Assembly: GCA_964188305.1 (NCBI GenBank) | Contig: OZ076900.1 | Length of the DNA stretch: 64,000 nucleotides | Source of the DNA: Podarcis bocagei | Taxonomy: Eukaryota | Strand: one strand, 5' to 3' | Shown: positions 5,031-39,101 of the stretch, in pieces | How the letters are laid out: the number at the start of each line of letters is the position of its first letter | How positions within the stretch are numbered: the stretch's first letter is position 1 | Program-made: the position numbers and the translations under genes | Notes under the pieces: generated by a model | The model's input: only the letters and a program-made list of their open reading frames with translations | The model's database searches: none | What the model was told of the DNA's origin: nothing

Positions 5031-8000
5031 GACATAGCTAAAATTTACCAAAAACCAAGGAGGAGGACCTGTAGCCCTCCATATATTATTAGACCCCAAT
5101 TCTTATCAAACCCAGCCAGCATGGCAAATAGTCAAGGATGATGGGAGGTGTAGTCCAACAACATGGCCAACTTTCCTTATTCCTGCCACATACCATGGTC
5201 ATCAGGTCTCATTTGACAGGAAAAGGCTTCACCATTTTGGTTAAAGTTACCTCAGTCCCTGCTGCAACTTTGATAACTATGTTGAGGCAGAAAGGCAGAA
5301 TATATAAAAATAGTTTATCAGTCTAGGGTAACTGGTGGATTCAGAACCCCGGGATTATGTACTGGAGCAACAGGGAAGAACCCAACTATTCACTGCATTG
5401 TTGCCAAAATATCCCCCTCCCCAGCAAATCAGCTTAGGGAGTTGTGTTTTCCTTCCATAACTCAACAAGTGAATCATGATGTGAGAGGTGCTTTTTTCAG
5501 AGGGGTGGTGGGATACAATGGTCCCGGAGGTTACTAGAAGCACCATGACAAATTGGCCACAGTGGAAAAAAGAAGGAAAGAAAAGTCTCTGCTAAGCTGT
5601 TTCTTAATAAATGCAAGTCTCCACCCTCTGGGTGTTTAGAGAATATAGGCACCCATCCCTAAAAAGTGCAGGAGTGGCCTGGGCTGCATTAGTAAGCACT
5701 AAATCCAAGGAACCAGTTGCAGATGAATTAAAATGAGGCATAGCTGGGAGTTATCAGCAAATACTTCCAAACCATATGGCTCAGCATCTTCCTATACATG
5801 GTCTTAGGGTTGGAGCTCTGAAACACTTGGTAGAAAGTTACATGGAGAAAGCCCATCACTACCCTCTGTAGTTTCCCAAAAAACCAATGCCTGTATCCAT
5901 TTGAGAACAGACTTTATACCAGTATGTATCTGTGCTGAAACTATTTTTAGCCATTTTATATGTAGGACTGTTTTTTTAAAAAAATGTTTTAAATCACTTT
6001 ATATTTTAAAAATTGCTTCCACGCCTTTCTTATTTTATGGTTATAACAGTCTTATTCATTTTATCCTCCTAGGTTTAATGGTTGTAGCTTCTGTCCTGGG
6101 ACCTTATGGTAAAGGGCAAGTCAGAAATCCAATAAAATAAAAATAAACACGATTGCATCAGAAACCCTTTACCGAAAGTCGTTTTTAAAAATCTAGTAAT
6201 TTTGTCAAAGGTGGACAGAAGGGAGGATAGTCCCTCCTATGGAGGTGTCAGTTAGATAGTTAGATATTAAATGGAAAGGGGGCAGGGAGTGAGACAGCTC
6301 CAGTGATTCCCTTTCTCCACTGTCAAGTGCCAATATGCTTCTGAATATCAATTACTGAGAATCACAAGTGGAGAGATTACCATTGTGCTCAGTCCTACTT
6401 GTGGGTTTTCCACAAGCAGATGGTTAACCACTGTAGCAACAGGATGCTGGACTAGGTGACATTTGGCCTGATGCAACAGTGCTCTTTTTATGTCAAATGA
6501 CCACATATTCTCTAATTAGGCATGTATGTGTGGGTTTCTTCTAAATATCAGAGCAAATTAGCCTGGCATCTTGCTGAAGAAGAGAGCTTAATATGACTTG
6601 TGATGTCTTTTGTTGCATTTCTGAATAGAGTACTCAAAATATTCAATTGGAGTACAATTTGCAGTATTTGAGATGTCTTGAATAATTCACACACATTCAT
6701 TTATTCTTGATTAGTGGATCAGGCTTGGCAAAAAAGGTAGTATTTATATTATTTTATGACATGTAGTATTAATAATGCATTCCTTTGCTCTCAAGCTGCT
6801 TTTTATTTTATTGTATATATTTTAAAAGAAAGAACAAAAATATGCAAAGAGATGAGACTCCTGAATAGAGATTAAGGAAACATGGAGATACTTTAAGTTG
6901 TCAATTGAAAATGTGGTTCATTGTATTAGTTATCCCTTATGGGAGCAGAGGAAAATGCATGGGCTGGTAACATGGCAGAAACGGGGAGGAAGTACGGGTG
7001 CAGAGGGGGGAAAGTATAAATAAATAACCTAGTTTGCAACAATGAAAGCAACAGATTTTACTGGTTGAACATGAATCCCCACAGTTTTGTTGCAAACACC
7101 AATTCGCAGGAGGGGGGGGGAGGGATGCAGCATAATGCAGGGAAGAATTGTCAGTTGAGACAATCTGCTTTGCGCGCAGAAGGTTCTAGGTTCAATCCTC
7201 GACTTCTCCAGGTAGGGCTGAAAAAGACTCCTGCTGGAAACCCTATTATGTTTTGCTTCTGGTTGAACAAATTTATTTGGAATGGTCCAGATTACACCCC
7301 TTGTGTTGCAAGATTTCATGAGGTGCCTAGCAGTGCAGGACTAGCTATATGGACTTGTTGGAATAGCATGTGTGGCAACCATGGCCTTAACCACACACTG
7401 TTCACACACTTGACTGGTGCATATTAATGTATACAAGTAGAACCCATCTAAACACAGGGAAATCATTGACATGCTATCCAGAAGCACATAGTGATATGTA
7501 TGTGGCCACCATGTGTGTTGACTTGTGAGGAGTGGGGGAGAAAGTAAGGCTAGCCTACATGGTCTCACAAACCCTGTCATATATGCTTTCTACAACTTGA
7601 GGTGGGGAGTGTCATCTGAATGCTCCTTACGTCTTGTCATTTGCAGAGCATTCGAAGATCACTCCTTGATAGTACATGGGCCATCGGGCCATCAATCTTA
7701 GTATTATATGTCTAGATCTCATTCTGCCTTTGTTTGCTTTTGCCTTTTTTTTTTTTAAAAAACCCCACTTTCATCAACCTTGTGTGATTTTCTCCTAATA
7801 AACACATTTTTGTATGCAGTTTTGACTAATGCACATGTTGTATTCACATTCAGAAGAAAGATTAAACACATGTTATGTGGCAAAAAAAGAGAAAAGATTA
7901 GATTTGTCTTTTAAATAAATAACAAATGAGAGGATCTATCAATTAGCTGAATAACTAAGCATGGGCAGACTGAGTTCAGTGGTTACATAAGAGAGAAGTC

Positions 8001-10112
8001 TCTCTTACCACCACTGGGCATGTAAGGAAGAAAGCTATTTGCTCTCCAGCCAAGATTTTTTTTGCTATATGAGCCTTGGATAAGCAAAGTACAACCTGTG
8101 CACCCTGGCTCCGCTGCTCAGTATTCACCAGGATGCACAGACTAGGCCCAAAGGGAACGCCCAAGTACCCTAAAGCCTCTATTGCTCTCCCCCATAATGC
8201 CTCAGCATGGCATTACATGGCCTGCACTGAATGCCAAACAGCTGAACAATGACAAATGAGGAAAGGCTGCTCTACAGTGTGAAGTGCAAGAAAATGGGAA
8301 GTCCCAACAGCCAGTCTGAGATTCACCCAAAATTCCTACTTGGTCCCACACTAAACAACTAGCCAAAGCCCATACTATAGAAGGAGGGAGGATACTGCAA
8401 AGAGCAGGGAGAAGCAGCAGAGTAGCCTTAAAGGGGCTGGTCAACCCTTGTCCACACTGACTGGCAATGGCTCTGCAGGATGAAGAGAAGCCACCACCAA
8501 CAGGTGCAGAAGCAAAAGTCTGAATTCAGACAATATGATTCAACTTCAAATGCACACAGGGTATATTCCTGAGATCAAATTAATGCTGAAAAAAATGGAT
8601 TCTTGGCAAGATTAGAGAGTTAGAAACCCGCCCCCCATTCTCTCAACACATAGAAATCCTCTTTGTGGAATGCTGAAGAAAAAAGCCATTTTACCATAAT
8701 TCCAGATAAATCAAATGCATGCAGCAGAGTGGTATATCATCATCATAAAACATGATCCATCTGATCAAATAAAGATGTTCTTTAGCCTTGCTTAAAATAT
8801 GTATGAATCAGACTGTGTAACAGCATATGAGCCTCTAATACAACCCACTGGATTATATCACTGAATTAAAAGACTTCCTTGAAATCCCAGGGACTTATTT
8901 TCTCTGCCAATTCTTTAAGTGTATTTTTCATGAAGCAGTAAGCTTGGTGTTTCTAATCTTATGAAATGCCAACTACAGTACTGTCTAGTGTACACTACTA
9001 GGCTGCCAAAAAATCCACCCAATATCTTATATTTATAGACCCACATCTCAGCATGGAGGGCAAATGTTAACTATGGGGCCACTTAAGTAATTGTAATCTC
9101 AAGTTTGAAACTCAAACAACTTCTATCAACTTTTCTTGCTAGTCCTAGGCACTGGTTCCTAGAACTAGAGTAAGACTTCTTCAGGGGACTTCCGGGGAGG
9201 TGCCTCCGGTAATGGCTGAATTCCTCTGATCGGGAGGAATTTGCCCCGTGGGAATTTGGGTCTGTACCGCCACGGCAAGGCGGAGACCCGTAAAAATCAC
9301 AGGCGGGAGAAGCCTGTGAACGTGGATTTGGTGGGCACCTTTTGCGCCTCCCCTACTCGCGGGGAAACCCGGTTTCGGGGATCCGGAGCAACGTGGGGTG
9401 AGCGGCACGGTGCTTCGAATCGTCTTCTTCTTCCACGGAGTGAAGCCGCATAGCTGTTGCCGGAGAGCACTGACCTTTTCCTGTGGACAATTTGATTCTA
9501 AAGTAACTACCCGTGAGTAGCGCTTAATCGGGAAAATTTGATTTTTTAAAAAAACGTCTAATTTGGCATCGAAACGGGGAAGGTTCAAAACAGGAAGTCC
9601 GCCTTCCCCTTTTGTAAATAGACTGAAGCAATTGAGGCTGCAAGCTGAAGTCTTGGAAAGCCTTTTGTAAAGACTAAATTTCCATAAGTAAAGAATATAA
9701 CCCCCCCCCCTTGGAGGCAGGAGAAGGGGGGGGGAGTTGTGGACTGAGTTTGCCTGCGGAAGAGACCAAGAGAGGCAAAATACCGCCGCTCGGACCCTGG
9801 GAACGGGCTGCTAGTAGGTCCGACGTTTGGTGGGATGTTTATTGACAGCATTTGGATCGTTCATTGACAGCTAGCATAAGAGAAGATACATTGTTTCCTC
9901 TGCCTCCAGCAGTGAAAGTAACTTTGAAATTAGTCTTGGGTCGTTTCAATTGTGCCTATAAGAGGATATTATGTATCAATACAAACAGAAACTGTTTCCC
10001 TCTAGTGGAAGTTCTTGAAACTGGCGGCCACATAAGATCTGGGCTGGGAAATTTCCAGCGGTAAGATAACACCCGTGAGACTGTGAGATTGACCTTGAAT
10101 CTATTGAGCGTT

Positions 10113-10811
10113 ATGGCAGATGGGAAAGACGGAATGTCGCCAGAAGAGGTCTTAGTGGTTGTATTAGGGAAAATAAATGACTCGCTGGAACAACTTCACA
10201 AGAAAATGGACGTGATAAATATGAAAGTGGATGCAGTAAATATTAAAACTGACTTGGTGGTAGAAAGTAGTAGATAGGTAGCCGTGTTGGTCTGCCATAG
10301 TCAAAATAAAAAAATTCCTTCCAGTAGCACCTTAAAGACCAACTAAGTTAGTTCTTGGTATGAGCTTTCGTGTGCATGCACACGAAAGCTCATACCAAGA
10401 ACTAACTTAGTTGGTCTTTAAGGTGCTACTGGAAGGAATTTTTTTATTTTGGTGGTAGAAAGTTTAAATAACCTGGGACAAAAGGTGAATACCAATATAG
10501 AAACCACCCAGAAATTGACACAGGAGTCTATCCTGATGCGGCAAACTGCGGATGAAGTTAAGGAGAAAACCTTTGCTGCTGAAGTTGGAGTGATTCAACA
10601 GAAGAGAGTCCCATCCATTCAAGGACAACTTTATGAATTCAAGCTGACACTGGTTATGACTGAACTTGAAGAGAAACAGATGAAATTGAGGATCAGAGCC
10701 CTACCTGAGGAAAATGTGAATTTATTCAAGGGCAATTGTGAAGGACGTTGGCTTGAAGAGAAGGGGGATTTGGAAACAGGGTTAAATTGGAAGTGGTTAT
10801 TGTTGGGCTGA
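10113..10811 (+). pseudogene. L1 ORF1 N-terminal coiled coil fused in frame to an ORF2 fragment, disrupted by a 195-bp insertion
   Basis: ORFs 10083..10277 and 10449..10811 are in the same frame. Removing the insertion plus one TSD copy gives a continuous 167-aa ORF from ATG 10113 (MADGKDGMSPEE...DLVVES/LNNLGQK...KLRIRALPEE/NVNLFKGN...LLLG*). Confidence 0.75.
10269..10451. mobile_element. Penelope-like element fragment forming a perfect 150-bp palindrome (10302-10451)
   Basis: Begins ggtagccgtgttggtctg, as does the copy at ~36455. Two 75-bp arms are perfectly complementary about 10376/10377. Flanked by the duplication ttggtggtagaaagt (10254-10268 / 10449-10463). Confidence 0.8.
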
Positions 10812-12297
10812 GTTGTTGTGGTGGGGATGAGGGTTGCGGTGATGTTGGGGATGCTGCTTTTGTTTCAAACATTGCAGGCTTTGGATGGGAGGGATTGTTC
10901 CAGGAGGTGGCAGAGGGACGTCTCTAGATTTGTTTGGCAGGGCAGGAAGCCCCGAGTAAAACTTAAGATATTAACGGATGCTAAAGAAGGAGGTGGACTT
11001 GCCCTGCCAGACCCCTAAGTTTTGTTGTGAATCATCTGCTTTTTGCTGGCTGAGAGAATCGGCAGAATCCGAGACCAGGGAGAAGAGCTGGTGGAAGTTG
11101 ACTGGAAGTTTAAAGACTATTTATAGAAATATTGCAAAATTAATGAATGTTAGAACACAGTTGGAATGAAGTTATATGGCTTTAGCAGAAATGTTATAAG
11201 GAATTAAGTATAAATAGATCAATAGAGTATTAAAGGGAACAAAATAAGGTCAGAATGTGTTAAGATAATTATAGGATAGAAAACAGGGGAAGATGGAAAG
11301 GAATTGCTGAAATAATTAATTGATGTGGAATACAAAAAGGGAGGTGTGAGGAAGTCGTGGAAACAAGCGAACAAAAGGTATGACATTGAAATTGTTTAAT
11401 ATGTTTTAAATGGTTTTTGTTTTGTTTTGTTTTGTTTTGCTTTGTTTGTTTGTTTTTTGTATTGTATTGTATGTCTTTTTTCTTTATGGTTTTTTGTAGT
11501 GTTGTGTTGAATTTGTTGGGAAACTAATATTTATTTATTTTTTTAAAAAAGTAAGTCTTCTTCAGCCTGGTGCTCGCCACATTAGCTGGTACTGATACGA
11601 GTTATATTAGAGAACAACTGAAGGTCCCTAGGTTGTGAGAAACAGCTTGTGATTGGATAGCCATCAAATGTAAGACCTTGGCCTTAATACAAAGTCCTCT
11701 AAATATTAGCCCAATCCCAGTTAGCATGCATAAGTACAAAGCACCCACACAGAGCAAATTAGCAATTGCAATGATGACTGAGAAATGTCACTGATATACC
11801 CTACTGGTGGGGTGGACAGTTCTAGGGAGGAGATCATAGTTCAATGGTAGTGAACATGTTTTGTATGCAGAAGGACTCAGATTAAATCGCTTGCTGCCCT
11901 GCATCTCCAGTCAAAAATGATTAGCTAGTAAGTGATGTCCAAGACCTCTTCCTGAGTCCCTAGAGGGCTTGTCATAGTGAGCAATACTGACTTAGCTGGA
12001 CTTGGTGTAAAATAATATCATATATCCCATCCAATGTTCCAGTTAAATTTATTCTTTTAAATGTCACAGACATTTGTGAAATTATAATTTAGCACATCAA
12101 GATACTCCATGCAGCCCTCCTTCCTTTATTTCTAGTGTGATGTTGTTGCTTATTTCCCAAGATTTGATCCCCCACCCTGAAGGCAATGTTTGGAAGAAGG
12201 CCTCGTGTTAGGTGGGGATATAACCTACATTTACTTTATGAGTCATCCCATTCCTCACATCATGTTTATGGAGTATATGTGCACTGAGCCTGAGAAA

Positions 12298-12485: not shown

Positions 12486-14295
12486 CTGAATGGAAGCCTT
12501 CCCCAATCACTGATGCCGAGTTACTGTCAGAAGTGTCAGATAGTCAGATGGAGTCACTATGCTGGCTTCTTGGCACATGGGTCCTGGTGTAGGAGTGAGG
12601 GGATAGAAAGTTCATCCACACAAGCAGGAGCACTGGATTGCTTCTGCAAGTGAGTTTGCAGAGCATTAACCTCCCTGCCACCTCCCCCCTCCAATAAGCA
12701 TCACTTTCTAGGAAACTAGTGTTATGCCCTACTTGCTAAGTTGCTTTTGGTTACCATTATTTCAACCATATGTGCTTTTCTCATAGATTTCAGCATGTCT
12801 GAAATGAAGAAACATACACCAAACAGCACGTCTGTTTACTAAGAAGAGTGATGTTTTACAACAGATAAAGGTTTGGTTTGAATGTTGAAGTGTTTCCTGG
12901 CTCCAAATCTAGTGTTCTTTCTTAGAAGTTCTGCTTCAGCTGGTCTTAAATTGATGGATGAGCCAGTAACTCAGCCTGAATGGGCTGAACTTGAATACTT
13001 CTTACTTATTCAGGTTTTTCCTCTTTCTCAGGTGCCTATGAAGACTGTGATCCTGGCTCACAGTGACGTGGTATGATGTGACATGATATACAGGACCAAA
13101 AGCAGAATCCATCTGAGTAGCAGTTGCAAGGCAAAAACAACAGGAGAGAATATTGCCCTCACTGTCCCACATTTGGGCTTTTCATAGCAGTGTTGAGGTT
13201 TTTGCTTACAGTCAAGCAAATACACACAGACACACACGCACACACACAAATAATCATCCATTTGAGCACTGTGGAGGCAAAATGTTGGACTATACTGGTC
13301 ATTTATCTCACGTTCATGTCTGATTTTTAGCATTTAAATAGCAACCACAAGGCTGGAGCCATCAGAATTGGGACCACAATGTGTGTGTGCATCGGCAGGG
13401 GTGGGAGATAGGAAGGATTCAATCTGAATGCAGATTGAATCTATTAACCCCAGTTAGAACTCTCCCGTAGTGAAGTCACTATGCCAGTATACTGGATCAA
13501 AGAATCGGACTGCACATTTTAAATATTTATTGCATTACCTTGTTAAACCTTTTCACTGTCATATAACCTCATTTCACTCACTTTGTCTACCCAGTCAAGA
13601 TTCATCTTTCAACTTCATATTTTGATTCTCTTATCTTTTCAGATCTCTCGCTCTCTTTTTAACAGCTACACAGAAGACTTACTTTTTTAAAAAAAAAAGT
13701 AGGATGGAGCATTTGTATCCATCTTCTTGAATACATTGTGCTACATTGTGAGTTTTAACTGATTTTTAAATGAATCACGGAAAGCACTAGAGAGGGTTTT
13801 CAAAGGTGTGTTCTTAATAGTTAAGTGGGTCCCCACCCACTTCTTGCATGTGGAAGTTAGATCAAACACAGACTATTTCAACTGAATGACTTGCAGGGCT
13901 GCTGCCTGTTGAGGATATTGTTTTCTAAAGTATGGTAGGTTAAGGCCTTTTTTCCCTTAAAAAAAGGGTTCTGAAATTATTTTACAGAACTTTATAGCAT
14001 TTGTATTGAAAGAGAAAGAAAAGGAAATAGTTTTCTTTCCCTATGTGATTTCTCCTTGACTATATATATACCTGGTTTTGTGACTAATTCTCCACCTGCA
14101 CTATACCTTTACAACGGTATCATACGACATTTAATAGGTATGGGTTTTCCAAGAGTATCCTGGTTACTTTGTTAAGGGTGCTGAAAGTTGTTAGGAGACG
14201 ACTATTTCCCTCACAGAGCCACAGTTTCCAGAGTGGTTTAGCAATCAATCCCTCTACCCAAATCTAGAACATTTGGACAATCTAGTTCTAGTACA

Positions 14296-23500: not shown

Positions 23501-24159
23501 AGGGCTAAGCTGGTTGGGCCCCCCAGCAGGGACCAGCTGCTTTTTTTTTTGTTTTAGTTTTTAATCTAAGTCTAACAAGACTTGGGACTTGGGCCTCATA
23601 TAAGCTCTGCATGGGCCAGGCACAACACAACTCATAAAGGTCTAACTATTTGATAGGGGAATCGAGGGGCATAAGAATAGTTAGGAATCTTTATAGCCAC
23701 CCACAGAGACATAATATACAGCAGAGCTGGGGGATTCTTTTTTCAGCTGAAGGGAAGCATTCCTGTGTGGGCAAACTTCAAAGAAGACGGGGGGGGGGGC
23801 TGGCCAGTGATGCATAGGGTGAAAGGCAACATGTAGGTGGACCCAGACACAAAAGTGTACAGAGCAACAAGTGTGGCTCTTACATTATTTCAGCAGGCTA
23901 CACTCCAGCTGTGCAAATGTCAGAGGTTTCTACACCCTGCATGCACATCTCTCCACCTATCCTCTGTCACAGTTCAGGGACATATTCCACTCAGGAAAAA
24001 GCACATGAGCATGTAGCCTTGGTCTGGTGGTGGTGGGGTATGACCAGAGGAGATGGGTGTGGCCTGATGGGGAAACACAGCATTGGGGAAAGTTACAAGG
24101 GCCAGAAAGGCTGGAATGGTGCTTTGAACTTCCAGGTCTGAGGTTCTGCACCCCTGATC

Positions 24160-24160
<1 letters not shown>

Positions 24161-24212
<52 letters not shown>
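24161..24212. repeat. (TG)n microsatellite
   Basis: Direct inspection. Confidence 0.97.
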
Positions 24213-24213
<1 letters not shown>

Positions 24214-24936
24214 CTTCAAGCAGTCATACTCCAAAATAAGGTAGGTTATGTCTTGGTTTGGGGATGTTTTGCTGATCAAAACTATACTTGTGAAAATAAT
24301 ACGTGAAAAAGTGGAAGATAAGAGGTATATTGTCTCCTGTATGATAATCTGAAATGTCTTGTTGCTTCCCCTGCCTAAAGCTAGAATCCCAACCCCACTT
24401 AACTAGCGTAGTTCAATAAGACTTACGTATGTCTCAGAAGACATGGTTAGGATTGTGCTGTAAAAGGTTTAATGGTACTCTCCTCCAAGTTGGCTAGCTT
24501 GGGTTCTTTATTGCTCTGTCCTGGTTTGTAGGTTTGTTAATTTTGTTGGGGAAATGTTTGGGGGTGAAAAGGGGAAATCCCCCTGCCAGGGGCTATTTAT
24601 ACTTCCGCTTATTCACCACATGTTGTAAACCTGATGGTGTCATGGCACCTTGCAGCCTGTCAGAGGAACAGTTATGTGAAAAAGTCAAGGAGGGCAAAAG
24701 AAGCTAATAATCAGTTTGAATGCCAGGGAGGGGACATTTGATTCTATATTGCCCCCTCTTTTCCCCCAGATTGCTGCTACAAAGCAAATCAGATACTAGA
24801 AGGTATAGTCCTTCCTCACACCCATTCAGAATAAAATATTTCCCTCCTTAATGTTTCACATAACAAAATCGGAATGACTGCTTATCGCGGTAACACCATC
24901 ACATTCACACTGTGACCTTGTTTGGGCTGAGATCTA

Positions 24937-25268: not shown

Positions 25269-25312
25269 CATGCCATTGTGCTTTTTTAAATGGCATGCGG
25301 AGCTGCAGGATA

Positions 25313-25313
<1 letters not shown>

Positions 25314-25345
<32 letters not shown>
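25314..25345. repeat. (CA)n microsatellite
   Basis: Direct inspection. Confidence 0.95.
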
Positions 25346-25350
<5 letters not shown>

Positions 25351-35118: not shown

Positions 35119-36451
35119 GAAGAATGGCAACACCAATGAGGATCAAGAAAGCCCTTCAGAGCTTCTACTTACTCAAGCTATACTCAGTGTTCTCTGTCCA
35201 CTCTGGTACAAGAGCCCTTACACTGGTGGACGTGTTTAAAGGTTGCACAACAAAGGAATCCAATGCAACAATTGTACTTATGGAAGCTTGTTGTGCAGTG
35301 GCTGCTTCTTGTTGTGTAATCTATTGCACAAGAATCTTTGGTAATGCACTTGTGTTTTCCTTTGCAAAACAATGTTTCACCAGCAGAACAAGGATATCTT
35401 TACACTGGATATTCCCATTGGCCTCAAAATGGAGATTACAGACCGGGCAGATGAGTCTCTGCTAGGTACTGCAGGTCTCAGGTTGCTCCTAGGTTTCTGG
35501 GGGAAAGAATAAATATCTGGCCCCTATTTCAAGGGACATAAAGTCTAGTATTTATCCAGATCTCTCACCAGCCTTAAGTGAAATGCATTGGTTCCTCATT
35601 AGACAGAGATTAGGCAGAAGCAGTGTATGTATCATATTTTCTGACATAAACAGGCATGTGATATCCCAACAGGGTTTACCACCATTAAAAAAAGATGGTT
35701 TATGCATATGGCCAAATAGAAATTAAAACACATTGAAAATAGAGCCTTCGCTGTTGCATGGGGAGGCATAATTTGCATTGGATTCCCTAATATCAGCAAA
35801 TTACACAGCCTTGCCACCAAGAAATGTGTTTGCAAGTTCCATGGGGATGCAGCATGCTGTTTAGATTAAAGGAAACCTGGTGCAGAAATAATGACATTCT
35901 CAATGGCTCGTCAACTGGACTACAATCCAGCTATTGGGCGGGGGGAGCATCTAAAGATGGCACTTTGGAAGTGAAACAAAGGCTAATTAACTGAAAGCTG
36001 CTTAGCCAAATTAAGGTAACTCCGGCCATTGTGGAAAGGCATTTATATCCCCTTTAACAATTGCATAATTATTCCATTCCCTCATTAACCAGGCATATAA
36101 GAGCCAATTAGCACCAATTAAACAGATGTGTATACACTTAAGTTCAATTATTTATTTAATCAAGAGTCACTGGCAACATGGTATATGCTATCATTTAAAT
36201 GAGAGAAGCCTCTTTATATGCATGCAAAGGCTATTGGTGATGGTGTTTTATAAAGTTTACTGAAGATGTGTTAAGAATGAGGAAGTAGTACCTGCTCAGG
36301 GATTAAGGGGTTGGAAAGAACAGAAGATTGGGTGAGGTACACTCAAATGCTGCTGCTGCAACTTGATAGATATCTGGTACAGTATATCACACACATAATC
36401 TCAGTTTTGTGTGTGTCCAAAATATAATGAAGTTATATAATTAATATAGAT

Positions 36452-36592
36452 TCAGGTAGGTAGCCGTGTTGGTCTGACGCAGTCAAAATAAATAAAAAAT
36501 TGTCCAGCAGCATCTTAGAGACCAACCAAGTTTCTTCTGGGTATAAGCTTTCGTGTGCATGCACACTTCATCAGAAACACTGAAACAGAAGT
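36452..36592 (-). mobile_element. Penelope-like element terminal (pLTR) fragment
   Basis: Homologous to 10272-10383 (gtagccgtgttggtctg...cttagagaccaac...gctttcgtgtgcatgcacac) and carries a hammerhead core. Confidence 0.75.
36541..36578 (-). ncRNA. Minimal type I hammerhead ribozyme (Penelope-associated)
   Basis: Minus strand gttt-CUGAUGA-A-GUGUGC AU GCACAC-GAAA-GC-UU-auac. Both conserved boxes are present, with a 6-bp stem II, a palindromic AGCU stem III, and stem I at 3/4 pairs. Confidence 0.75.
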
Positions 36593-39101
36593 TCTTTTTC
36601 ACCCACTGGAATTCCTTGAACAGCTATCTCCCCACAATGTTGTGTATCACCTTTTGAAACACATGTCAACAATCATTTAGGAATAATTCTAGATGTATCT
36701 CAGCTTGGTCACTGATATCATACCCTCCTTGTAATTTGCTCTGTTTCTCTTTTCTGCCCACCCAGGGTGGCCCTGTCCTCTGCCTGCCCCTCAGAGATGG
36801 CGTGTCATGCAGAGCTGGGCCTCGGTGGCAGCATGCTCTCCTCCTCACTCACTATCCAGCAGCCCCTACTAGCTGGCAGCAGTGGCCATGGAGAGGCAAT
36901 GGAATGCTCCCTTTGCCACTGCTCAGGATAAGTGGAGGCTCATCCTCATCTCTGAGCTTATGCCGATAAGCCCAAATATAGGATTAATATTTGGGGGGGG
37001 GGTGATCACTGGGTTTCTGGAAAAAGAGGACATCCTGGAGAGTTACTGGAGAGCAAGCGTCGAAAAATGGGCAGGCAGTAATGCACATTCTTCTCTCCCA
37101 CACCTCCAGGCTCTTCATGCCCTGGCTCTCTCTGGCTGAATTCACATGGTCTTTGCTTCTGAAGTGGGACCATTGTTTTATGCATGGGAAATTCCACCCG
37201 GACTGAAATCCTAGAGAGTCGCTGATGGTCTGTGTAGACAATACTGAGCAATTGGTCCGACTCAATACAAAGCAGCTTCCTAGGTTCGTATTCACTAGCT
37301 GGGTTCAGAATTGCATGTTGGTTGAAGGTCTCTAAATTTTTGGACATTCCACTGTAACATATACACTTTTAACAAGGTGGAACACACATCTTTAAACAAA
37401 CTGAATATTTGGCTTTTGTATTACAAAATTATGGCTTCAGGCCTGTCTTTGTGATTTCAGATGTGATTCTACTCCCCCCTCCCTTGATTTGCTTTAGCAC
37501 TTATTTAAACCTCAAAAGAAAAAAAATCAAAGCACTTCTCTAAATCAAATGACAATGGAAAGAAATCTTGACTTCAATTAAGCTTTCAAAATATGCTATT
37601 ATGTTGCTACAAAAAAGTCTCTTAACTGTCTTCTCCCACAAAAATAAATAAATATATATATATTTTAAAAATGTGCCAGTTCCAAATGAGGGCACTTAAG
37701 AGGAGAAGTATATAACCAAACTAATGTCATTTAGCTTTATTTTCATGTGGGTAGGAAGCTATGACTGCTCATTACTGCTGATGAAAAAAAGAAAGAAAAA
37801 ATAGGAAGGAAGAACTCTGTCCTCCAGCTAAAACCTTGAAAATCCCATAAAAAGGTTCATGCATTCATGCATAATTAGTAGGGGTCATCAGATCAAACTT
37901 ATTAATGGAAAGTACATTTTAATTCTCATAAACTGGATGGAGGAGTTTCAATTCTCTTTTGCATATTAGGCTGCTTAATCACACTGTACAACCTTAGCAG
38001 GGAGGATTAACTGGCAGGAGAAGACATTGGCGCACAGAATACTCCTTGTCAGGAAAATTCACTTCTTCCCACAGACTCTGTGTCCCCTTTTTTCAGATAA
38101 TATAACTGTTCCAGGGGTTGAATAATTTGAGATCCTCATACAAGCAAACCTGTTACCTTTCCACACACCAAACCTCAGTGATCTAACCCACTCAGCTTAC
38201 ACAGAACGAATACACCAGATAAGGAACATAGGGAACAACTTTAGGGGAAAACATTAAGGTGAAAAAGAAGCTCTGCTAATATTATTGCTAATGGTGAGAT
38301 CCACCTGTGAGAAACTGAAGAACGTCCTCTCAATTTCTATTTCCCCAAATAGAGATAATTTTGCACATAGCTCTAGATCCTGCCAGATGACATCATTATG
38401 GAAAGTGCTCCCATTCAACTAGATTCATAGTTTACTGGCATCTCAACTGTAAATCCAAGATCTCTGCTAATGGATATTCTTACCCAAGCAAATGTGACAT
38501 TCTCAGTTCCTTGCATGAGAATGTTTCCATTAATGTCTCAGCATCTTATCAGTCTAGAAAGTATTTCACCAGTTCCAACCCACACCTCTGAGGCCAACTT
38601 TTGAGCCCAGACATTCCCGAAATTTCTCATCCCCACACCCCAAAACTCCCTCACACTGCGACATAGAAATGGTTGCACAAAAGCTATCCATTGGAAGTAG
38701 GGGCCAGGGCTAGCACTAGAAAAATAGAAATACACTGTTGTAGAAGTGGCTCCTCAGTCAACAAAGTCCCATGATTCCTGGATGGTTGCAATGCAAATTT
38801 GCAACTGTACAAAGAAAACTCTCTTGTTCAGGAGAGAGGAAACATAGGAAAATATGGTTGTACAAAATATCCTGTGACCTGTTTTTTCCCCATTTTCATA
38901 ACATCAATCAGCCTCTATGGACCTGAAATTAAATCCTATATTGGCATCACTTTTGGTGAAAATGGAAGGAAATAATACTATCAGAGGCAGAATGCTTCAG
39001 TGTGATTACTGATGGGTAAGAATCTGTGTGCATATTACACATTGGCTGCCATTTTGCTATTGCAAAGTTCAAGGTTTTACTATTAGTAAATAAAGCCATT
39101 A

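What the first reader, a model, noticed from the sequence alone, without database searches (positions are those of the whole stretch)
10254..10463. Perfect loop-less 150-bp palindrome, a Penelope fragment folded back exactly at its hammerhead stem II
Seen: 10302-10451 is a perfect inverted repeat centred on GTGTGCA|TGCACAC. The sister copy at 36.5 kb continues past this motif into the CUGAUGA box. Here the sequence instead turns back on itself, leaving two back-to-back GAAAGCTCATAC half-ribozymes and no CUGANGA box. The insert is bounded by a 15-bp duplication and disrupts the mini-L1 ORF. Known: Penelope-like elements often carry inverted terminal segments and minimal hammerheads. Inference: the ribozyme stem II hairpin acted as a snap-back primer during cDNA synthesis, a concrete mechanism for these inversions. 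The perfect arms imply a recent event. It could extrude a cruciform, or yield dsRNA/siRNA if transcribed from the L1 promoter upstream.
Basis: partly seen in the sequence, partly recalled or inferred. Interest (0 to 1): 0.72.

Follow-up and report, generated by a model that had tools for sequence, protein, structure and literature searches.

The report
Folded-back Penelope retrotransposon stub
A 180-base dead fragment of a Penelope-like retrotransposon landed in an older lizard retroposon as two back-to-back copies that form a perfect 150-base palindrome hinged on the element's hammerhead hairpin; the layout is already known for this element class, and only the position of the hinge is a small new clue to how it arises.

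Summary
10302-10451 is a perfect palindrome with no spacer (75-nt arms). It lies in a 180-bp insert (10269-10448) flanked by a perfect 15-bp target-site duplication. A related lizard locus and protein carry that site only once, so this is a discrete insertion that splits an open reading frame of a 2.4-kb L1-type retroposon.

The insert is the segment from the reverse-transcription start to the hammerhead of a Penelope-like element (PLE) or a PLE-mobilised derivative. The axis is the centre of the 14-nt self-complementary hammerhead stem II. One arm carries 33 extra bases, which matches the published 30-40-nt PLE "tail". Neither strand has a CUGANGA box, so no ribozyme is left.

Head-to-head 5'-truncated copies, one-sided tails and palindromes at the inverted junction are all published PLE features. 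The junction palindromes were already read as self-priming (Arkhipova 2013). So does annealing of two cDNAs primed from both target strands, an activity shown in vitro for the Anolis PLE (Frangieh 2024).

The claim that stem II is a genome-wide inversion hot spot could not be tested here. Other notes of this scan report several similar hammerhead-centred palindromes elsewhere in this genome; I treat these as unchecked leads. No read data were available to rule out an assembly artefact. Verdict: real, young, ordinary for its class, of modest interest.

The parts
10254..10268 (.). Left copy of the target-site duplication TTGGTGGTAGAAAGT. Its 3' end would be the top-strand primer.
   Evidence: 100% direct repeat. 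The site is single in the uninterrupted relative L002 and P0001.
10269..10301 (-). 33-nt one-sided extension ('tail') ending at the distal end of the element (...CCAACACGGCTACCTATCTACT on the minus strand).
   Evidence: Present on the left arm and in the sister copy but absent from the right arm. Its length matches the published 30-40-nt PLE tail, about 34 nt in the Anolis element PAc.
10302..10376 (-). Left palindrome arm. The element's sense strand is the minus strand here. It runs from the stem II centre through GAAA, the predicted cleavage site and the conserved GUUGGUCU/AGACCAAC stem-loop.
10370..10383 (.). 14-nt self-complementary hammerhead stem II (GTGTGCATGCACAC). This is the symmetry axis.
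   Evidence: In the sister copy the same 14-mer lies between CUGAUGA-A and GAAA.
10377..10451 (+). Right palindrome arm. The element's sense strand is the plus strand here. It ends at ...TTTATTT(TG), 79-82 nt from the first base of stem II. Its last 3 nt are shared with the duplication.
10449..10463 (.). Right copy of the target-site duplication.
36454..36600 (-). Sister copy, 5'-truncated and not inverted, with a complete minimal hammerhead motif. On the minus strand: CUGAUGA 36574-36568, bulged A 36567, stem II 36566-36553, GAAA 36552-36549, palindromic AGCU, predicted cut after U36545.
9169..11565 (+). Host element: a 2.4-kb retroposon with an A-run at its 3' end and a 16-nt duplication AGTAAG[A/T]CTTCTTCAG (9169-9184 and 11550-11565). 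The insert splits its ORF into pieces 10113-10268 and 10449-10808.
   Evidence: Relatives P0001-P0004. Uninterrupted copy L002.

Best explanation
This is a dead-on-arrival, 5'-truncated, head-to-head insertion of the RT-start-to-hammerhead segment of a Penelope-like element, or of a non-autonomous element that PLEs mobilise.

Proposed mechanism:
1. The element's endonuclease made nicks staggered by 12-15 bp in the ORF of an older L1-type retroposon.
2. Each freed 3' end primed cDNA on element RNA at one of the two internal RT start sites. The top strand started at the distal site and so gained the 33-nt tail. The bottom strand started at the proximal site, where its CAA-3' end can pair with UUG in the RNA.
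3. Both antisense cDNAs ended in the copy of hammerhead stem II. That copy is a 14-nt perfect palindrome, so the two cDNA 3' ends could pair with each other.
4. Each cDNA was then extended on the other. This closed the gap and produced a palindrome with no spacer, flanked by the duplication.

Shown here: the anatomy, the discrete insertion, the axis at stem II, the 33-nt asymmetry, and that the template RNA had not been cut by its ribozyme (both arms keep 15 nt 5' of the predicted cleavage site).

Inferred: the two-strand priming, by analogy with the Anolis element PAc in vitro, and the pairing step.

The product has no ribozyme and no coding capacity. Its only likely effects are disruption of the already defective host retroposon and a potential hairpin in DNA or RNA.
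For: - Perfect 75-nt arms with no spacer, and a perfect 15-nt duplication.
- Empty site in a related protein and locus.
- The sister copy shows that the axis 14-mer is the hairpin between CUGAUGA-A and GAAA of a minimal hammerhead.
- Frangieh 2024 (PMC11167929): the Anolis PLE nicks and extends both target strands. RT starts internally at two sites about +85 and +119 from the start of stem II. The roughly 34-nt tail is the stretch between them, and uncleaved RNA is the main template. [quoted passage not shown]
- Craig 2021 (PMC8557442): an inverted 5'-truncated copy and a 30-40-bp tail at one end only are typical of PLE insertions.
- Arkhipova 2013 (PMC3846280): palindromes sit at PLE inverted junctions, and head-to-head is the commonest arrangement.
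Against: - Only one inverted locus could be examined, and the pairing step is not observable in a finished insertion.
- The family differs in sequence from PAc, so the match of end positions is by geometry, not by alignment.
- Two independent cDNAs both ending in stem II is more demanding than one cDNA folding back.
- The 3-nt overlap at the right junction can equally be read as a microhomology-mediated template jump.
- No RT/GIY-YIG ORF of this family is in the window, so class membership rests on the motif and the architecture.
- Rfam models do not detect the hammerhead.
- No reads were available to exclude an assembly artefact.
Confidence: 0.4

Rival explanations
1. One reading: intramolecular snap-back. 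One target-primed cDNA, starting from the top-strand 3' end at 10268 at the distal site, copies through stem II. Its 3' end folds into the 5-bp/CATG hairpin and primes copying of the cDNA itself. The copy-back stops 33 nt short of the cDNA's 5' end, jumps to the other target end through the TTG microhomology, and is sealed.
For: - Arms made this way are perfect and spacer-free by construction.
- There is a 3-nt overlap (TTG) at the right junction; the chance of this is about 1/64.
- Arkhipova 2013 interpreted junction palindromes of PLEs as self-priming.
- Hairpin-primed second-strand synthesis is a classical RT activity (my own knowledge).
- Unchecked scan notes give a spread of hammerhead-centred palindrome lengths, 125-215 bp. 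That fits a variable copy-back length with a ceiling at about 2 x 108 nt.
Against: - It does not predict that the copy-back should stop just where the published tail begins. A stop falling in the 30-40-nt range has roughly a 1 in 10 chance.
- It needs an extra template jump.
- It ignores the demonstrated priming from both strands.
Confidence: 0.33
2. Ordinary PLE head-to-head junction whose position in stem II is a coincidence. The inversion arose by whatever generic process makes PLE inverted repeats, and the 14-nt palindrome played no part.
For: Scan notes list PLE palindromes of about 1, 1.3 and 2.4 kb in this genome, whose axes must lie elsewhere. Inverted junctions in rotifer PLEs lie at the 5' end of the pLTR, not at the hammerhead.
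Against: A junction falling exactly on the centre of the only 14-nt perfect palindrome in the roughly 108-nt segment is unlikely by chance (about 1 in 100 positions). Several scan notes report the same axis elsewhere, but these are unchecked.
Confidence: 0.1
3. The palindrome was inherited, not made here. A transcript of an older palindromic copy was reverse-transcribed as a unit.
For: Notes report similar-sized palindromes (148 and 150 bp) elsewhere in the genome.
Against: The reported sizes vary (125-215 bp) rather than forming one family. A 75-bp perfect RNA hairpin is a poor RT template. No second palindromic copy is in the window.
Confidence: 0.06
4. Assembly or sequencing artefact (fold-back chimera), or a fold-back created after insertion by replication template switching at the hairpin.
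For: PLE inverted structures are known to trouble assemblies.
Against: The palindrome sits inside an exact target-site duplication with element-typical ends, the frame is preserved, and a single-copy site exists in a relative. A later fold-back would not place the inverted arm directly against the duplication.
Confidence: 0.07

Closest known systems
Canonical insertion architecture of endonuclease-containing Penelope-like elements (Evgen'ev & Arkhipova 2005; Arkhipova 2013, PMC3846280; Craig 2021, PMC8557442)
   Same: A 5'-truncated copy with an adjacent inverted 5'-truncated copy (head-to-head). A 30-40-nt tail at one end only. A target-site duplication. A palindrome at the inverted junction. 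A hammerhead motif next to the ORF start.
   Different: This is a minimal stub of 180 bp with no pLTR body and no ORF. The junction palindrome is the hammerhead stem II itself, whereas the rotifer examples have it at the 5' end of the pLTR. The target is not a microsatellite.
Poseidon_Ac (PAc) of Anolis carolinensis, characterised in vitro (Frangieh 2024, PMC11167929)
   Same: An ATG inside or at stem II. Two RT start sites about 34 nt apart, roughly 80-120 nt downstream. Uncleaved RNA as template. Both target strands can prime, which predicts head-to-head products.
   Different: The sequence is not alignable by eye with the PAc consensus. Here the reading frame after the ATG closes after 9 codons (25 in the sister copy), so the source may be non-autonomous. 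PAc stem II is not a perfect palindrome.
Twin priming and 5' inversion of L1 (Ostertag & Kazazian 2001; my own knowledge)
   Same: Both target strands prime cDNA on one RNA, giving an inverted 5' part and a direct 3' part within one target-site duplication.
   Different: L1 inversions have a small deletion or duplication at the junction and arms from different parts of the RNA. They do not form a spacer-free perfect palindrome. Here both arms start at the same internal initiation region.
Hairpin-primed (snap-back) second-strand cDNA synthesis by reverse transcriptases (my own knowledge)
   Same: A self-complementary cDNA 3' end primes copying of the cDNA and produces a perfect fold-back.
   Different: It is known as an in vitro property of retroviral RTs. 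It has not been shown for a PLE RT, nor in vivo at a hammerhead stem.
Animal non-LTR retrozymes (Li, Clavereau & Pollet 2026, bioRxiv 10.64898/2026.07.22.740005)
   Same: Short hammerhead-bearing, non-coding, PLE-related repeats. Reptile consensus sequences average about 176 bp.
   Different: Retrozymes are defined by tandem arrays. Both copies here are solitary.

Membership tests
Penelope-like element insertion | ORF with telomerase-like RT and GIY-YIG endonuclease | tested here: not met
   No such ORF lies next to either copy. This is expected for 140-180-bp 5'-truncated stubs, so the feature cannot decide the question for a fragment.
Penelope-like element insertion | Adjacent inverted 5'-truncated copy (head-to-head) inside one target-site duplication | tested here: met
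   Definition taken.
Penelope-like element insertion | 30-40-nt 'tail' present at one end only | tested here: met
   33 nt (10269-10301) on the left arm only. Published values are 31-40 nt.
Penelope-like element insertion | Palindrome at the inverted junction | tested here: met
   14-nt perfect palindrome at 10370-10383. Described for PLEs.
Penelope-like element insertion | AT-rich or microsatellite target | tested here: inconclusive
   66% A+T within +/-50 nt, against 59% for the window. There is no microsatellite and no ATT at the inferred nicks.
Penelope-like element insertion | Sequence homology to a curated PLE consensus | not tested
   The only consensus seen (Poseidon_Ac) has no reference usable by the tools and looks unrelated in sequence by eye. 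No lizard repeat library is available.
Minimal type-I hammerhead ribozyme of PLEs (Cervera & de la Pena 2014) | Core CUGANGA ... [quoted passage not shown] | tested here: met
   Met in the sister copy: CUGAUGA-A-GUGUG(CAUG)CACAC-GAAA-GC-UU, against the descriptor features. Helix I is weak, 4 of 6 pairs by inspection.
Minimal type-I hammerhead ribozyme of PLEs (Cervera & de la Pena 2014) | The same core in the palindromic copy | tested here: not met
   No CTGANGA on either strand of 10269-10448. Only stem II, GAAA and the cleavage-site half remain.
Hammerhead families of Rfam | Match to a curated covariance model | tested here: not met
   No hit at the gathering score in the window and none at E <= 10 in 36400-36700. 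Minimal PLE hammerheads lack a helix III, so a miss is expected.
L1 twin-priming inversion | Inversion junction with a deletion or duplication, arms from different RNA regions, poly(A) 3' end | tested here: not met
   The junction has no spacer and is perfectly symmetric. Both arms cover the same region, and there is no poly(A).
Non-LTR retrozyme | Tandem array of hammerhead-bearing units | tested here: not met
   There are two solitary copies in 64 kb.

The most novel reading that the evidence does not exclude
Hammerhead stem II is a genome-wide hot spot for the inversion junction. On this reading the hairpin, kept long and G+C-rich in PLE hammerheads, doubles as the cis element through which cDNA ends pair, with themselves or with the cDNA from the other strand. 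That pairing would build the head-to-head structures of PLEs and complete integration. It would give the motif a DNA-level role and could help explain why ribozyme catalysis is dispensable for insertion in vitro.
Probability: 0.3. Interest if true: 0.6.

Novelty: new member of a known kind. Interest (0 to 1): 0.33.

Why it matters
How Penelope-like elements build their tandem and inverted structures is still described as undefined (Craig 2021). An in vitro system has existed only since 2024.

Minimal, young, perfectly preserved stubs like this one record the junction chemistry. Both ends, the tail, the duplication and the exact switch point are all readable within 210 bp. If a census confirmed that such junctions pile up on the stem II palindrome, it would narrow the models to pairing of self-complementary cDNA ends. 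It would also suggest a simple marked-template experiment in the PAc system.

For the host genome the locus is of little consequence. It sits in an already defective retroposon, although perfect palindromes of this size are potential fragile sites and hairpin-RNA sources.

Tried and rejected
- **Rfam.** Nothing at the gathering score in the whole window except a tRNA-like SINE head. Nothing at E <= 10 on the sister copy.
- **Other copies.** BLAST and nhmmer found no further copies in the window.
- **Public collections.** Exact scans for the stem II + GAAAGC 20-mer gave one chance hit in metagenomes, unrelated in context. They gave none in viral contigs and none in prokaryote genomes. These collections hold no lizard genomes, so no census of breakpoints was possible.
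- **ORF route to other copies.** No ORF of 30 aa or more lies inside the palindrome, so the exact-protein look-up could not be used to fetch other copies.
- **Host ORF.** The word search with the right ORF piece was blank. Pfam gave nothing for the ORF pieces or their relatives, so the L1 nature of the host rests on its architecture. It also rests on an ORF2-like FVWQGRKPRVK...GGLALPD motif that I recognise from memory.
- **RT-start stem-loop.** RNA folds of the putative stem-loop are not better than shuffles. Only the 8-bp closing stem is shared by both copies.
- **Literature.** A string search for the element's sequence found 0 papers.
- **Related locus.** L002 holds no copy of the PLE fragment.
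- **Reads.** No reads tool was available, so the assembly-artefact test was not run.
- **Rejected idea.** Truncation by ribozyme self-cleavage is ruled out, because both arms extend 15 nt 5' of the predicted cut.

Full report
**1. Observation**

The repeat finder reports arms 10302-10376 and 10377-10451, 75 nt each, 100% complementary, with nothing between them. It also reports a 15-nt direct repeat TTGGTGGTAGAAAGT at 10254-10268 and 10449-10463. A script confirmed the identity of the arms and showed that the next outer pair does not match.

No other zero-spacer palindrome longer than 24 nt exists in the 64-kb window. The single strand folds at -90 kcal/mol against -15.5 for shuffles. The first three bases of the right repeat copy (TTG) also complete the right arm. 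The duplication is therefore 12-15 bp and the arm 72-75 nt.

**2. It is a discrete insertion**

The insert (10269-10448, 180 bp) plus one repeat copy is 195 bp, or 65 codons. The ORF pieces on either side are in the same frame. The left piece ends ...TDLVVES and the right piece begins LVVES....

A profile-free search of the right piece found four relatives. The best is P0001 (340 aa). It aligns with the left piece up to its residues 92-96 (LIAES) and with the right piece from the same residues 92-96. The five duplicated codons therefore occur once in the uninterrupted relative.

The locus encoding P0001 is L002, from NCBI assembly GCA_027172205.1, chromosome record CM049768.1. I believe from memory that this is a lacertid lizard assembly; I could not check that here. 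It is about 84% identical to the flanks and carries the 15-bp site once.

The joined ORF was not submitted to any tool. The pieces were searched separately.

**3. The host**

The host is a 2.4-kb retroposon at 9169-11565. It has a 16-nt duplication with one mismatch and an A-run at its 3' end. This agrees with the scan's note s1-341806.

Pfam does not recognise its ORF or the relatives. An ORF2-like motif downstream (FVWQGRKPRVK...GGLALPD) is my own recognition from memory, not a test.

**4. What the insert is**

The only other copy in the window lies at 36454-36600 and is 83-84% identical. On the minus strand it reads GUGUUU-CUGAUGA-A-GUGUG(CAUG)CACAC-GAAA-GC-UU-AUACCC.... This has every feature that Cervera & de la Pena (PMC4209133) list for the minimal type-I hammerheads of Penelope-like elements:
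- the two core boxes;
- the G10.1-C11.1 pair;
- a long helix II;
- a palindromic AGCU in place of helix III;
- H17.

Rfam models do not score it, which is expected for a motif without helix III.

In the palindromic copy the 14-nt stem II is the axis. Each strand keeps stem II, GAAA, the cleavage-site half and about 60-90 nt downstream. Neither strand has a CUGANGA box, so no ribozyme remains.

Both arms retain 15 nt 5' of the predicted cut. The RNA template had therefore not been self-cleaved. This agrees with the in vitro finding that uncleaved RNA is the main substrate.

**5. Fit to published Penelope biology**

Craig et al. 2021 and Arkhipova et al. 2013 describe PLE insertions with these features:
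- they are highly 5'-truncated;
- they often have an inverted 5'-truncated copy abutting;
- a 30-40-bp 'tail' is present at one end only;
- they are flanked by a target-site duplication.

Frangieh et al. 2024 worked with the Anolis element PAc. They showed that:
- the ORF's ATG lies at stem II;
- reverse transcription starts internally at two sites, about +85 and +119;
- the roughly 34-nt tail is the stretch between those sites;
- the protein nicks and extends both target strands.

Here an ATG lies in the stem II loop. The two outer ends of the insert lie 79-82 and 115 nt from the first base of stem II, and the asymmetry is 33 nt.

An 8-bp stem, GUUGGUCU/AGACCAAC with an AC-rich 3' strand, is shared by both copies. 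It brackets the proximal end. This resembles the AC-rich stem-loop in which PAc initiates, although the folds are no better than shuffles.

The sequence itself is not that of PAc (by eye). The frame after the ATG closes after 9 codons, or 25 in the sister copy. The source may therefore be a different, possibly non-autonomous, family (compare the preprint).

**6. Mechanism**

Any process in which a cDNA that has just copied stem II pairs through that self-complementary 14-mer with an antisense strand, and is then extended, yields exactly this product. There are two versions.

The copy-back must then stop 33 nt short and jump to the other target end, using the TTG overlap.

*(b) Two-strand priming.* Both nicked strands prime, as in vitro. 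One starts at the distal site and one at the proximal site. The two antisense cDNAs pair through stem II and copy each other, which also completes both strands of the integration.

Version (b) predicts the tail-sized asymmetry and the positions of both ends. The TTG overlap then reads as three base pairs between the bottom-strand primer (...CAA-3') and UUG in the RNA. Version (a) is kinetically simpler and makes perfect arms by construction.

I lean slightly towards (b), 0.40 against 0.33. Together they take about three quarters of the probability. In both, stem II sets the axis.

The general idea is not new. Arkhipova et al. 2013 wrote that the consistent palindromes at PLE inverted junctions are best interpreted as self-priming. 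What this locus adds is that the palindrome used is the hammerhead stem II.

**7. What could not be tested**

That needs the whole genome, and none of the searchable collections holds lizard DNA.

The scan's own notes list 18 Penelope palindromes in this genome. Several short ones are said to have the hammerhead on the axis: 125, 139, 148, 175 and 215 bp. Others are 1-2.4 kb, and their axes must lie elsewhere. These notes are unchecked leads. They fit a hot spot but do not establish one.

Two earlier follow-ups on sister cases (s1-354177, s1-340173) also concluded that such structures are real and already described for the class. The scan has therefore met this kind of structure before on other DNA of the same genome.

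No reads tool was available, so an assembly artefact cannot be formally excluded. The exact duplication, the element-typical ends and the single-copy site in a relative make it unlikely, about 5%.

The age is only loosely bounded. No differences in 90 paired sites allows up to 3.3% divergence.

N runs in the window were left untouched.

**8. Verdict**

This is a real, probably young, dead Penelope-type head-to-head stub. It is a new member of a known kind. The hinge at the hammerhead stem is a neat but modest clue to the mechanism. Interest 0.33.

Noticed in passing
window 11538-11561 and 13672-13701: The 23-nt string TTTTTTAAAAAAGTAAGTCTTCT, which is the 3' A-run of the host retroposon plus its flanking duplication, recurs in inverted orientation 2.1 kb downstream (93% over 30 nt). 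It may be a second insertion into a similar target, or an older inverted repeat into which the retroposon landed.
   Followed up: partly
window 7140-7209 (+): A tRNA-like sequence just above the Rfam gathering score (29.5 bits, E = 0.044) with imperfect stems. It is probably the head of a tRNA-derived SINE rather than a gene.
   Followed up: no
window 10818-11018 (+): An ORF fragment, ...RFVWQGRKPRVKLKILTDAKEGGGLALPDP, resembles from memory the conserved post-RT motif of L1 ORF2 proteins. It directly follows a coiled-coil ORF1-like part. Relatives P0001-P0004 (274-362 aa) share the arrangement, so this 'mini-L1' chimera seems to be a family, not a one-off deletion. Pfam recognises none of them.
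   Followed up: partly
window 24157-24223 and 25303-25349: (TG)n and (CA)n microsatellites in inverted orientation 1.1 kb apart, with short unique extensions that also pair (43 nt, 91%).
   Followed up: no
window 10269-10274: The left junction reads GAAAGT|AGTAGA. The last 3 nt of the duplication (AGT) are repeated as the first 3 nt of the insert. This could be primer slippage at the start of reverse transcription or the true end of the element. The sister copy ends differently (…CCTACCTG).
   Followed up: partly
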